DNA of 61,470 nucleotides, from NCBI RefSeq assembly GCF_006345805.1, contig NW_021837033.1:1-61470 (forward strand), given 5' to 3'. Within the stretch, counting starts at the first letter, position 1. The number at the start of each line of letters is the position of its first letter. The notes beneath the pieces are model-generated. The model worked only from the letters and a program-made list of their open reading frames with translations, had not been told where the DNA came from and made no database searches. The position numbers were made by a program, and so were the translations under genes. Positions 14,786-16,191 of the stretch are shown here, piece after piece. The stretch is from Octopus sinensis (Eukaryota).

Positions 14786-15096
14786 ACAGATAGTCACATG
14801 TAATTTGGCAACGTATTGCGATTGACCATAATAGACAAAGATGAGAGTTAATAATATTGTTGTGATAAATCCGAGATGAAGCGAAAATTAAATAATTGAT
14901 ATCGGTATATCTGTGAACATTAGGATTAAGATGAAGAACCTAGGAAAGCTGGAGAAGTAAGAGATCCTCAAGAGACATAAACCTGTGGCTGTAGAGAGAC
15001 ACGCACATGCTATATATAGATATTAATTGATGATGAACGAAAGAGCGTATATTGTACAATCTGAGAAGGAAATAGCCAGGTATATAGAATAATAAA

Positions 15097-15709
15097 GGCG
15101 GCGATCTGGCAGAAACGTTAGCACGCCGGGCGAAATGCGTAGCCGTATTTCGTCTGCCGCTACGTTCTGAGTTCAAATTCCGCCGAGGTCGACTTTGCCT
15201 TTCATCCTTTCGGGGTCGATAAATTAAGTACCAGTTACGCACTGGTGTCGATGTAATCGACTTAATCCCTTTGTCTGTCCTTGTTTGTCCGCCTCTGTGT
15301 CTAGCCCCTTGTGGGTGGGTAGTAAAGAAATAGGCATTTCGTCTGCCGCTACGTTCTGAGTTCAAATTCCGCCGAGGTCGTCTTTGCCTTTCATCCTTTC
15401 GGGGTCGATAAATTAAGTACCAGTTACGCACTGGGGTCGATGTAATCGACTTAATCCGTTCCTCTGTCCTTGTTTGTCCTCTCTGTGTTTGGCCCCTTGT
15501 GGGTGGGTAGTAAAGAAATAGGCATTTCGTCTGCCGCTACGTTCTGAGTTCAAATTCCGCCGAGGTCGTCTTTGCCTTTCATCCTTTCGGGGTGGATAAA
15601 TTAAGTACCAGTTACGCACTGGGGGTCGCTATAATCGACTTAATCCGTTTGTCTGTCCTTGTTTGTCCTCTCTGTGTTTAGCCTCTACTGGGTAGTAAAG
15701 AAATAGGTA
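15097..15709 (+). mobile_element. SINE-A1 head-to-tail trimer flanked by a 16-bp TSD
   Basis: One head plus two headless ~185-188-bp units. aggtatatagaataat occurs at 15078-15093 and 15705-15720. Confidence 0.92.
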
Positions 15710-16191
15710 TATAGAATAATGAACGACGCAAGTTTTAGTCGTTGATGTGACGTGCGGTATAGTGGCTGTTCTTCGATTGATGACGTAAATTCAGTTGTTG
15801 GATCATTAGAGTTATCTGCTCCTGAAATAGTGTGTAAGTATTTGAGTACCCCAAGCGATACCCATACTTTTAATGTTATGATAGGGCAGAACCAATGTAA
15901 CATAGGATGCGACAAGGCCGTACCTTATGAATTTCCGATACAATCCACCAGACGGGCTTCTTTACAATCTCGCTCATAAGGTATGAGTGGAGTCGGGGCC
16001 ATAGAAATGACATTTGCCCACTTACGGAAAACGAAGCAGGGACTTTATGTCTCCCTGAGAAATATTGCATCCATGCTATTATTATACATTCAGACAACCG
16101 TCTGAAGAAAACGGTTTCTTTATAATGATATAATGTTCTCAATGAAGAAGCTGTTAGAAACGGCCGCAATGGATTGACACACATGCACATA

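What the first reader, a model, noticed from the sequence alone, without database searches (positions are those of the whole stretch)
15078..15720. SINE-A1 appears to insert at AG(G/A)TAT, matching its own 3' end
Seen: the three A1 insertions with readable TSDs have duplications that start, in element orientation, with AGGTAT (15078), AGGTAT (21984, minus strand) and AGATAT (58144). The upstream TSD copy lies outside the element, so it reports the pre-insertion target. The element ends ...GAAATAG, so its last bases overlap the first bases of the target. Inference: priming by microhomology or a sequence-selective partner endonuclease, giving a targeted SINE. n=3 is small.
Basis: partly seen in the sequence, partly recalled or inferred. 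Interest (0 to 1): 0.72.

Follow-up and report, generated by a model that had tools for sequence, protein, structure and literature searches.

The report
Octopus SINE inserts at tail-matching sites
Three independent copies of a short octopus retroposon (SINE "A1") sit in target sites that begin with AG(G/A)TAT, the same bases that end the element. This is real but is most simply the ordinary base-pairing between the target DNA and the element's RNA tail during insertion, and three copies cannot prove a true targeting system.

Summary
The window holds three A1 insertions with perfect 15-16 bp target-site duplications (TSDs): AGGTATATAGAATAAT, AGGTATGGTCTGAAG and AGATATTGGTCCATAT. Their flanks are unrelated. 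AG[GA]TAT occurs at only 7.6e-4 of background positions, so chance is excluded.

One correction: the element does not end at ...GAAATAG. Its tail is homologous to the A2 tail, and the joints inside multimers read AAATAGGTAT|TTCG. So the end is at least ...GAAATAGG and probably ...GAAATAGGTAT. The TSD start therefore repeats the element's last 3-6 bases.

The other SINE tail families in the window behave the same way, each with its own tail:
- A2 tail ...AAAGGATT, TSD starting AGGATT.
- C tail ...CCAATATT, TSDs starting ATATT or ATTATT.

This favours priming of reverse transcription by pairing of the nicked target with the RNA's 3' end. It argues less for a single sequence-specific endonuclease, which is not excluded.

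No partner LINE and no further octopus DNA could be reached, so n stays at 3. This is a new example of a known kind of behaviour and is moderately interesting. Odd extra tandem TSD copies at the 5' junctions remain unexplained.

The parts
15078..15093 (+). Upstream TSD copy of the A1 trimer: AGGTATATAGAATAAT. This is pre-insertion target sequence. Just upstream, 15067-15077 reads GGAAATAGCC, which resembles the SINE end AAGAAATAG.
15094..15704 (+). A1 SINE in trimeric form. It has a head (about 15094-15146) and three 189-bp body-plus-tail units (15147-15335, 15336-15523, 15524-15704). The unit joints read AAATAGGCAT|TTCG. Units are 90-95% identical to each other. There is no TTTT inside the element.
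15705..15720 (+). Downstream TSD copy, AGGTATATAGAATAAT. Its first 3-6 bases are also the element's own terminal bases. The first TTTT (candidate Pol III stop) lies 28 nt further on.
21722..21969 (-). A1 monomer. It ends ...GTAGTAAAGAAAT before the TSD. Its first ~18 nt are present twice (AAGGCGGAGAGCTGGCAT / AAGGCGGAGAACTGGCAG).
21970..21994 (-). Upstream TSD copy AGGTATGGTCTGAAG (21970-21984), plus an extra partial tandem copy AGGTATGGTC (21985-21994).
21707..21721 (-). Downstream TSD copy AGGTATGGTCTGAAG.
58144..58175 (+). Two tandem upstream copies of the TSD AGATATTGGTCCATAT (58144-58159 and 58160-58175).
58176..58398 (+). A1 monomer, truncated at the 5' end (starts AGCTGGCAGAA). Its tail reads ...GGGTAATAAAGAAAC.
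58399..58414 (+). Downstream TSD copy AGATATTGGTCCATAT. The hexamer here carries the target's A rather than the family's G. These bases therefore came from the target DNA (the primer) and were not copied from the RNA.
8350..8712 (+). A1-A2 heterodimer. A full A1 unit is joined at AAATAGGTAT|TTCG (about 8571-8585) to a body with an A2-type tail. The outer TSD, ATGTATATA, lies in a TA microsatellite.
33842..34168 (-). A1 with 1.5 units and the same internal joint AAATAGGTAT|TTCG. It is truncated at the 3' end, so no TSD can be read. GAGATGAAG occurs twice at the 5' junction.
53265..53480 (+). A2-tail comparison copy. The TSD is (A)GGATTTTTGGTCTTAT versus (A)AGATTGTTGGCTTTAT. It starts with the A2 tail end AGGATT.
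43085..43285 (-). C-tail comparison copy. The TSD ATATTCA(A/G)CCCATAT starts with the C tail end ...CCAATATT.
10990..11175 (-). C-tail copy inserted into the ATTATT end of an A2 copy. The TSD is ATTATTA.

Best explanation
A1 is one tail variant of an abundant octopus SINE that is copied into the genome by a LINE enzyme through target-primed reverse transcription. Its RNA ends ...GAAAUAGG(UAU), and Pol III would carry on into the flank because the element contains no TTTT stop.

The proposed mechanism is as follows. After the LINE endonuclease nicks the target, the free DNA 3' end must pair with these last bases of the SINE tail. That pairing sets where copying starts. Only nicks that expose the complement of AGGTAT are used efficiently; AGATAT also works through a G:T wobble.

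This would explain three things:
- every TSD begins with the element's own last 3-6 bases;
- none of the source copy's downstream flank is carried along;
- A1 units join to each other, or to an A2 body, at an internal GGTAT.

What is shown: the TSDs, their independence, the identity between the tail end and the hexamer, and the family-specific TSD starts. What is inferred: the pairing step, the position of the nick, and the identity of the enzyme.
For: (1) There are three perfect, independent TSDs starting AG[GA]TAT. The background frequency is 7.6e-4.
(2) The A1 and A2 tails are homologous at both ends: A1 ...AGAAATAGGTAT versus A2 ...AGAAAGGATTATT. AG[GA]TAT follows GAAA(T/C) at all three flank junctions and at two internal junctions. 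The trimer's joints read AGGCAT.
(3) Other tail families in the same window have TSD starts that match their own ends: A2 AGGATT, C ATATT, C ATTATT(A).
(4) In c58144 the downstream hexamer carries the target's A. The hexamer is therefore primer DNA lying inside the TSD.
(5) A1 has no internal TTTT. The first T4 lies 28-84 nt downstream, so transcripts carry flank sequence and copying must start internally.
(6) Published RTE/Bov-B LINE-SINE pairs show the first TSD base tracking the 3' repeat of the RNA. Those authors propose that the RNA end influences nicking or priming. RTE is the recently active LINE in Octopus bimaculoides.
Against: - Only three A1 TSDs are available, plus four from the other families.
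- The 'tail end' of each family is partly defined from the same junctions, so the argument is somewhat circular. The internal joint GGTAT could come from the SINE body, which reads GCGGTATTTCG.
- Six base pairs matching in three of three is stricter than usual for non-specific LINEs.
- The Bov-B paper notes that targets there rarely resemble the 3' repeats.
- No partner LINE was seen.
- The extra tandem TSD copies are not predicted by this model.
Confidence: 0.55

Rival explanations
1. The partner LINE has a sequence-selective endonuclease that nicks just before AGRTAT. A1 is a dedicated parasite of that LINE. The identity between the hexamer and the tail end is secondary: it would arise from transcripts that read into the target, or from the LINE's own tail having evolved to match its target.
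For: - Three of three sites share a 6-bp motif, which is stricter than typical annealing preferences.
- A1 and A2 TSDs both start with AGG.
- Extra tandem TSD copies at two sites could be footprints of repeated cutting at a preferred site.
- Site-specific LINE clades exist, and a Dong-type LINE is reported in O. bimaculoides.
Against: - C-family TSDs start ATATT or ATTATT, and the A2 TSD differs at positions 4-6. Several different specific enzymes would then be needed.
- No motif is shared upstream of the nick.
- No such LINE is present in the window.
Confidence: 0.25
2. Heritable targeting templated by the RNA. Each A1 transcript reads into the first bases of its own TSD. That read-through sequence acts as a guide for choosing the next site, so the preferred hexamer is inherited from the source copy rather than fixed by the element or by the enzyme.
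For: - A1 has no internal terminator, so transcripts must include the flank that starts AGRTAT.
- All junctions carry the hexamer.
Against: - Nothing separates this from a fixed tail end.
- Beyond six bases the TSDs are unrelated, so at most six bases would act as a guide.
Confidence: 0.12
3. Chance, or an artefact of how TSDs are called. Extending a duplication into the element's end would make TSDs seem to start with element bases.
For: Maximal-extension TSD calling can add one or two element bases by chance.
Against: - The upstream copies lie outside the element and carry all six bases.
- The probability is about 1e-6 or less.
- The flanks are unrelated, so these are not copies of one locus.
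Confidence: 0.03

Closest known systems
L1/Alu insertion at TT|AAAA with a poly(A) tail (established knowledge; summarised in PMC13295347)
   Same: The TSD begins with the same bases that end the element's RNA. The target preference is compatible with both the endonuclease's choice and primer-template pairing. TSDs are 7-20 bp, and 5' truncation occurs.
   Different: Here the matching end is a complex hexamer, AGGTAT, not a homopolymer. The SINE has a specific non-poly(A) tail, so it probably depends on a 'stringent' LINE. The enzyme is unknown.
RTE-clade LINE/SINE pairs (Bov-B with Sauria SINE; plant RTE with its SINEs), 'Tn-TA' signature, PMC13295347
   Same: Within one machinery, the first TSD base follows the 3' repeat of the particular RNA: A for (CAA)n LINEs and T for (ACCTTT)n SINEs. 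The RNA end is proposed to influence nicking or priming. RTE is the active LINE clade in octopus (PMC9115989).
   Different: Only one base co-varies there, against 3-6 here. The T-stretch about 10 nt upstream is not seen at the three A1 sites. Those authors say targets rarely resemble the 3' repeats.
Site-specific non-LTR elements (R1, R2, Tx1, Dong/R4, microsatellite-targeting LINEs) and their non-autonomous derivatives
   Same: A defined sequence lies at the insertion point. In some of them, read-through RNA pairs with the target to set the start of copying (from my own knowledge).
   Different: Their targets are long, defined sequences such as rRNA or snRNA genes or microsatellites. The A1 sites share only six bases and otherwise lie in unrelated unique DNA.
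Octopus OR1 and other CORE-SINEs (Ohshima & Okada 1994, cited in PMC4824008 and PMC4758252)
   Same: It is an octopus SINE with a tRNA-type head, a conserved central block and exchangeable tails. The A1, A2 and C tails on one head and body fit the mosaic behaviour of CORE-SINEs.
   Different: I had no OR1 sequence to compare. ARAGORN and Rfam did not recognise the head. I found no description of target preference or multimer joints for this family.

Membership tests
LINE-mobilised SINE (retroposed by target-primed reverse transcription) | Dispersed multicopy short element flanked by TSDs of variable sequence, about 7-20 bp | tested here: met
   Five A1 copies and about eight copies with other tails. 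TSDs of 15-16 bp, all perfect.
LINE-mobilised SINE (retroposed by target-primed reverse transcription) | 5' truncation, no terminal inverted repeats | tested here: met
   c58144 starts at AGCTGGCAGAA and lacks the first ~8 nt. No inverted ends were seen in the sequences read.
LINE-mobilised SINE (retroposed by target-primed reverse transcription) | 3' tail shared with an autonomous partner LINE | not testable with these tools
   The A1 tail occurs only in SINE copies in the window. No octopus genome could be reached.
tRNA-derived CORE-SINE (octopus OR1 type) | tRNA-related head with a Pol III promoter | tested here: inconclusive
   ARAGORN found no tRNA and Rfam had no match at E<=10. A B-box-like GAGTTCAAATTCC is visible by eye.
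tRNA-derived CORE-SINE (octopus OR1 type) | Conserved ~60-bp CORE domain | not tested
   No reference CORE or OR1 sequence was on hand. The literature says OR1 of octopus is a CORE-SINE. The resemblance to the MIR core is from memory only.
Sequence-specific (site-targeted) retroelement | Nearly all copies lie in one defined target sequence | tested here: inconclusive
   Three of three readable A1 TSDs start AG[GA]TAT, but n = 3.
Sequence-specific (site-targeted) retroelement | The target is a long, specific sequence such as a multicopy gene or a microsatellite | tested here: not met
   Beyond the hexamer, the three empty sites are unrelated unique sequences.
Microhomology-primed TPRT (tail end equals TSD start) | The first TSD bases are identical to the element's last bases | tested here: met
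   The A1 end ...AAATAGG(TAT) is defined by homology with A2 and by internal joints. The TSDs start AGGTAT, AGGTAT and AGATAT.
Microhomology-primed TPRT (tail end equals TSD start) | TSD start co-varies with tail end between families that share head and body | tested here: met
   A2: AGGATT. C: ATATT and ATTATT(A). A1: AGRTAT. The numbers are small (1-3 per family) and the argument is partly circular.
RTE-type 'Tn-TA' insertion signature | A T-stretch about 10 nt upstream of the first TSD base, with a TA step at the nick | tested here: not met
   The upstream flanks are ...CTGAGAAGGAAATAGCC|A...TCTCTTAAGAAGGTC|A and ...GTGCATCCGGGA|A. None has TTT at -10 or T at -1. n = 3.

The most novel reading that the evidence does not exclude
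A1 is a truly hexamer-targeted SINE whose specificity is carried by its own RNA 3' end, which acts as a guide. Because each new copy is again followed by AGRTAT and is transcribed into it, the guide would be inherited and could drift. AGATAT lineages would be one example. The extra tandem TSD copies would then be footprints of repeated attacks on the same preferred site.
Probability: 0.12. Interest if true: 0.65.

Novelty: new member of a known kind. Interest (0 to 1): 0.35.

Why it matters
SINEs make up a large share of octopus genomes, and how they choose insertion sites affects where they disrupt or rewire genes.

If the preference holds genome-wide, a six-base, tail-matched preference would give a natural system of three tails on one body. 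That system could separate the contribution of RNA-DNA pairing from that of endonuclease choice in target-primed reverse transcription. The question is still open for LINEs other than L1 (PMC13295347).

It would also help identify the partner LINE and help predict insertion hot spots.

As it stands, this is a small-sample example of a familiar principle.

Tried and rejected
**Attempts to collect more A1 copies (all failed)**
- I searched the 5.8-billion-protein set with the antisense ORF that runs through the SINE. It gave one hit. That hit is a 543-bp ENA contig with a diverged A1-like copy ending GAAATAAATAT and no readable TSD.
- An exact 17-mer scan of metagenome contigs gave 95 loci. None of them carried the SINE; only L096, fetched, matched it.
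- 19-mer scans of GTDB genomes and of viral contigs matched only bacterial or MAG records and one viral contig, which I take to be chance matches.
- The O. bimaculoides protein found with a LINE query has no contig on record. Another hit was a 743-bp contig.
- I ran no further search on other reading frames, because the first search showed the database holds almost no octopus DNA.

**Other searches that found nothing**
- A partner LINE in the window: none carries the A1 tail.
- Papers containing the SINE sequence: none.
- Rfam and ARAGORN on the head: nothing.
- Folding of the SINE RNA: not unusually stable, z = -1.4.
- Pfam on the retroelement ORF fragments: nothing.

**Ideas rejected**
- The three sites are copies of one locus or lie in one repeat family. 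The flanks are unrelated.
- The hexamer is a TSD-calling artefact. The upstream copies lie outside the element.

Full report
**What the window is**

The 61-kb window is AT-rich (GC mostly 0.30-0.40) and full of microsatellites and minisatellites. It has no evident cellular genes. A retroelement ORF fragment in it has Octopus bimaculoides protein A0A0L8I0U5 as its best named relative, at 89% identity. So this is octopus nuclear DNA.

The finding's interval 15078-15720 holds a SINE. It has a head, GGCGGCGATCTGGCAGAAACGTTAGCACGCC..., followed by three tandem 189-bp body-plus-tail units.

**Copies in the window**

blastn with this element finds five copies with the same 'A1' tail:
- 15094-15704 (+), a trimer.
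- 21722-21969 (-), a monomer.
- 58176-58398 (+), truncated at the 5' end.
- 8350-8712 (+), an A1 unit joined to a body with a different 'A2' tail.
- 33842-34168 (-), 1.5 units, truncated at the 3' end.

About eight further copies share the head and body but carry other tails: A2...GTAGAAAGGATTATT, or C...TTGAAACCAATATT. The A1 tail 17-mer GGGTAGTAAAGAAATAG occurs seven times with up to three mismatches, against 0.22 expected, and always inside these SINE copies.

**Check of the observation**

A script that searches for the longest direct repeat across each element's ends returns three results:
- AGGTATATAGAATAAT, 16/16, at 15078-15093 and 15705-15720.
- AGGTATGGTCTGAAG, 15/15, at 21970-21984 and 21707-21721 on the minus strand.
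- AGATATTGGTCCATAT, 16/16, at 58160-58175 and 58399-58414, with a further copy at 58144-58159.

The other two A1 copies give no usable A1-type 3' junction with flank.

I joined the flanks of each site to reconstruct the empty sites. They share nothing beyond the hexamer; local alignment scores are 15-22. These are therefore three independent insertions.

AG[GA]TAT is not a common word here. It occurs 100 times on both strands, against 128 expected from shuffles. With the A1 copies masked, the frequency is 7.6e-4 per position. Three of three by chance is about 4e-10. My estimate, allowing for the motif having been picked after seeing the data, is about 1e-6.

**Where the element really ends**

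An alignment of A1 and A2 3' regions shows the two tails are homologous at both ends and differ by a replaced middle segment. At the very end, A1 reads AGAAATAGGTAT and A2 reads AGAAAGGATTATT. The AGG is therefore element sequence.

Inside the multimers, the joint between one unit's tail and the next unit's body reads AAATAGGTAT|TTCG in the 8350 and 34166 copies. In both joints of the trimer it reads AAATAGGCAT|TTCG. So AG[GA]TAT follows GAAA(T/C) at five of the seven A1 unit ends, and the trimer's two joints read AGGCAT. A consensus built from these copies would run to ...GAAATAGGTAT.

The one outside relative found, L096, ends GAAATAAATAT.

There is a caveat. At the internal joints, GGTAT could equally come from the body, which reads GCGGTATTTCG. 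Only AGG is certain as element sequence.

**Other tails behave the same way**

For the other families, the TSDs I could read start with each family's own tail end:
- A2 copy at 53265: upstream AGGATTTTTGGTCTTAT, against the A2 end AAAGGATT.
- C copy at 43266: ATATTCA(A/G)CCCATAT, against the C end CCAATATT.
- C copy at 11165: ATTATTA, inserted into the ATTATT end of an A2 copy.
- The heterodimer at 8350: ATGTATATA after ...GAAAGG.

These are old copies and few in number. In an AT-rich genome, ATT-type matches are also cheaper than AGGTAT. Even so, the pattern 'TSD start follows the tail, not one common motif' is consistent across seven junctions.

**Mechanism**

The features are those of LINE-driven target-primed reverse transcription: variable 15-16 bp TSDs, a 5'-truncated copy and no inverted ends.

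A1 has no TTTT inside. The first T4 lies 28, 84 and 70 nt beyond the three tails. Pol III transcripts would therefore carry flank sequence, and copying must start internally at a defined point. No flank from a source copy is seen in the three insertions.

The simplest account is that the nicked target strand pairs with the last bases of the tail, AGGUAU, and that this pairing sets the start. The c58144 site fits. Its target has AGATAT, which would pair with AGGUAU through one G:T wobble. The inserted copy carries the target's A at the 3' junction. That shows the hexamer there is primer DNA within the TSD, not reverse-transcribed RNA.

The same microhomology explains the recurrent joint at an internal GGTAT. 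It could arise by a template switch of the growing cDNA onto the 3' end of another A1 RNA. It could also arise by insertion into a resident copy at its AGCGGTAT site, with the 5' end resolved by homology. The A1-A2 heterodimer suggests that such a joint formed more than once.

The trimer's units differ by 5-10% while its TSD is perfect. The multimer therefore existed in the RNA, or was made during insertion, rather than arising by later unequal crossing-over.

**Rivals**

A sequence-selective endonuclease in the partner LINE remains possible. Three of three six-base matches is strict, and A1 and A2 TSDs both start with AGG. Against it, the C family differs, and nothing is shared upstream of the nick.

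A more novel version is that the guide hexamer is inherited through read-through of each copy's own TSD. Nothing here separates this from a fixed tail end.

Chance and TSD-calling artefacts are excluded for this window.

**What is known**

OR1 of octopus is listed as a CORE-SINE with a tRNA-type head. I could not compare sequences, and ARAGORN and Rfam did not recognise the head.

In O. bimaculoides, the repeat library holds full-length RTE and Dong LINEs, and RTE shows recent activity.

For RTE-clade LINEs and their SINEs, a 2026 study reports that the first TSD base tracks the RNA's 3' repeat. It proposes that the RNA end influences nicking or priming. It also reports a T-stretch 10 nt upstream and says targets rarely resemble the repeats. 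The three A1 sites lack that T-stretch.

The L1/Alu case, TT|AAAA with poly(A), is the textbook analogue.

The A1 pattern is thus a new, unusually long example of a known behaviour. It is not a member of the long-target site-specific class.

**Limits**

I could not raise n. The protein, metagenome, genome and viral collections hold essentially no octopus DNA. No LINE with the A1 tail is in the window, and no paper in the library contains the sequence. The decisive test is the genome-wide logo by tail family and subfamily, together with the partner LINE's own TSDs.

**Unexplained**

Three of the four A1 copies with an intact 5' junction show local tandem duplications there:
- The whole 16-bp TSD occurs twice upstream of c58144.
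- Upstream of c21984 there is a 10-bp partial TSD copy, and the first ~18 nt of the SINE are duplicated.
- GAGATGAAG occurs twice at c34166.

The fourth, c15078, instead has GGAAATAG two bases upstream of its TSD, which resembles the SINE end.

Possible causes are stuttering of the reverse transcriptase at 5' end joining, slippage on short repeats, or an earlier abortive nick-and-fill event at a preferred site. I cannot decide between them.

Noticed in passing
window 58144-58175; 21970-21994 and 21930-21969 (-); about 34168-34185 (-): There are local tandem duplications at the 5' junctions of A1 copies. In c58144 the full 16-bp TSD occurs twice upstream. In c21984 there is an extra 10-bp partial TSD, and the first ~18 nt of the SINE are duplicated. 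In c34166 GAGATGAAG occurs twice. The simple insertion model does not predict these.
   Followed up: partly
window 15067-15083: The flank just upstream of the trimer's TSD reads GGAAATAG-CC-AGGTAT. It resembles the SINE's own end AAGAAATAGGTAT, so the target was similar to the tail over more than the hexamer.
   Followed up: no
window 15147-15704: The A1 copy in the finding is a trimer of a 189-bp body-plus-tail unit. The units are 90-95% identical, yet the TSD is perfect. The multimer therefore predates or accompanies insertion. The element contains no TTTT.
   Followed up: yes
window 8350-8712: This is a heterodimer: a complete A1 unit joined at AAATAGGTAT|TTCG to a body carrying the A2 tail. 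Its TSD, ATGTATATA, lies in a TA microsatellite.
   Followed up: partly
window 38635-40400: Two 3'-terminal ORF fragments of a retroelement are each followed by (AAT)n. One reads ...HRRPDIVTF...IIDVAVPGD...; the other ends ...AHILRRTLSIQ*. The second fragment is bracketed by a ~170-bp direct repeat that includes the microsatellite (39294-39460 and 40175-40400). From memory, the motif looks like a PD-(D/E)xK nuclease of Dong/R4-type LINEs that target (TAA)n. Pfam found nothing. The best named homolog is from O. bimaculoides.
   Followed up: partly
window 19664-20319: By eye these are frameshifted remnants of a Tc1/mariner-like transposase (for example ...DQWKQEIFSNEFSFSLLPTAGRVDVLRQPGEAFNPDCLLPTVKDGGRSVMVWVAIS). 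Pfam gave no hit for the 90-aa piece.
   Followed up: no
window 14348-14792 (-), 16290-16760 (+), 31513-31836, 34656-34817, 60270-60650: A second repeat family of about 450 bp has an internal CA/TA microsatellite and a tRNA-like end (...CCACATGGTTCCGGGTTCAGTCCCACTGCGTGGCACC on one strand). It has five or more copies at 76-80% identity.
   Followed up: partly
window 6390-6964; 24622-25339; 17243-17839; 55560-56461: Large tandem arrays: a 100-bp unit x5.7, a 25-bp unit x29 (GTCGCCTAAACGTGGATCTTCGTTC), (TGG)n of 600 bp, and a 900-bp (TACA)-type array.
   Followed up: no
L096 (ENA metagenome contig ERZ23499442, 543 bp): This was the only outside sequence carrying an A1-type SINE (86% identity). 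It ends GAAATAAATAT. It sits between a fragment of the second repeat family and an A2-like tail fragment, so octopod DNA is present in that metagenome.
   Followed up: partly
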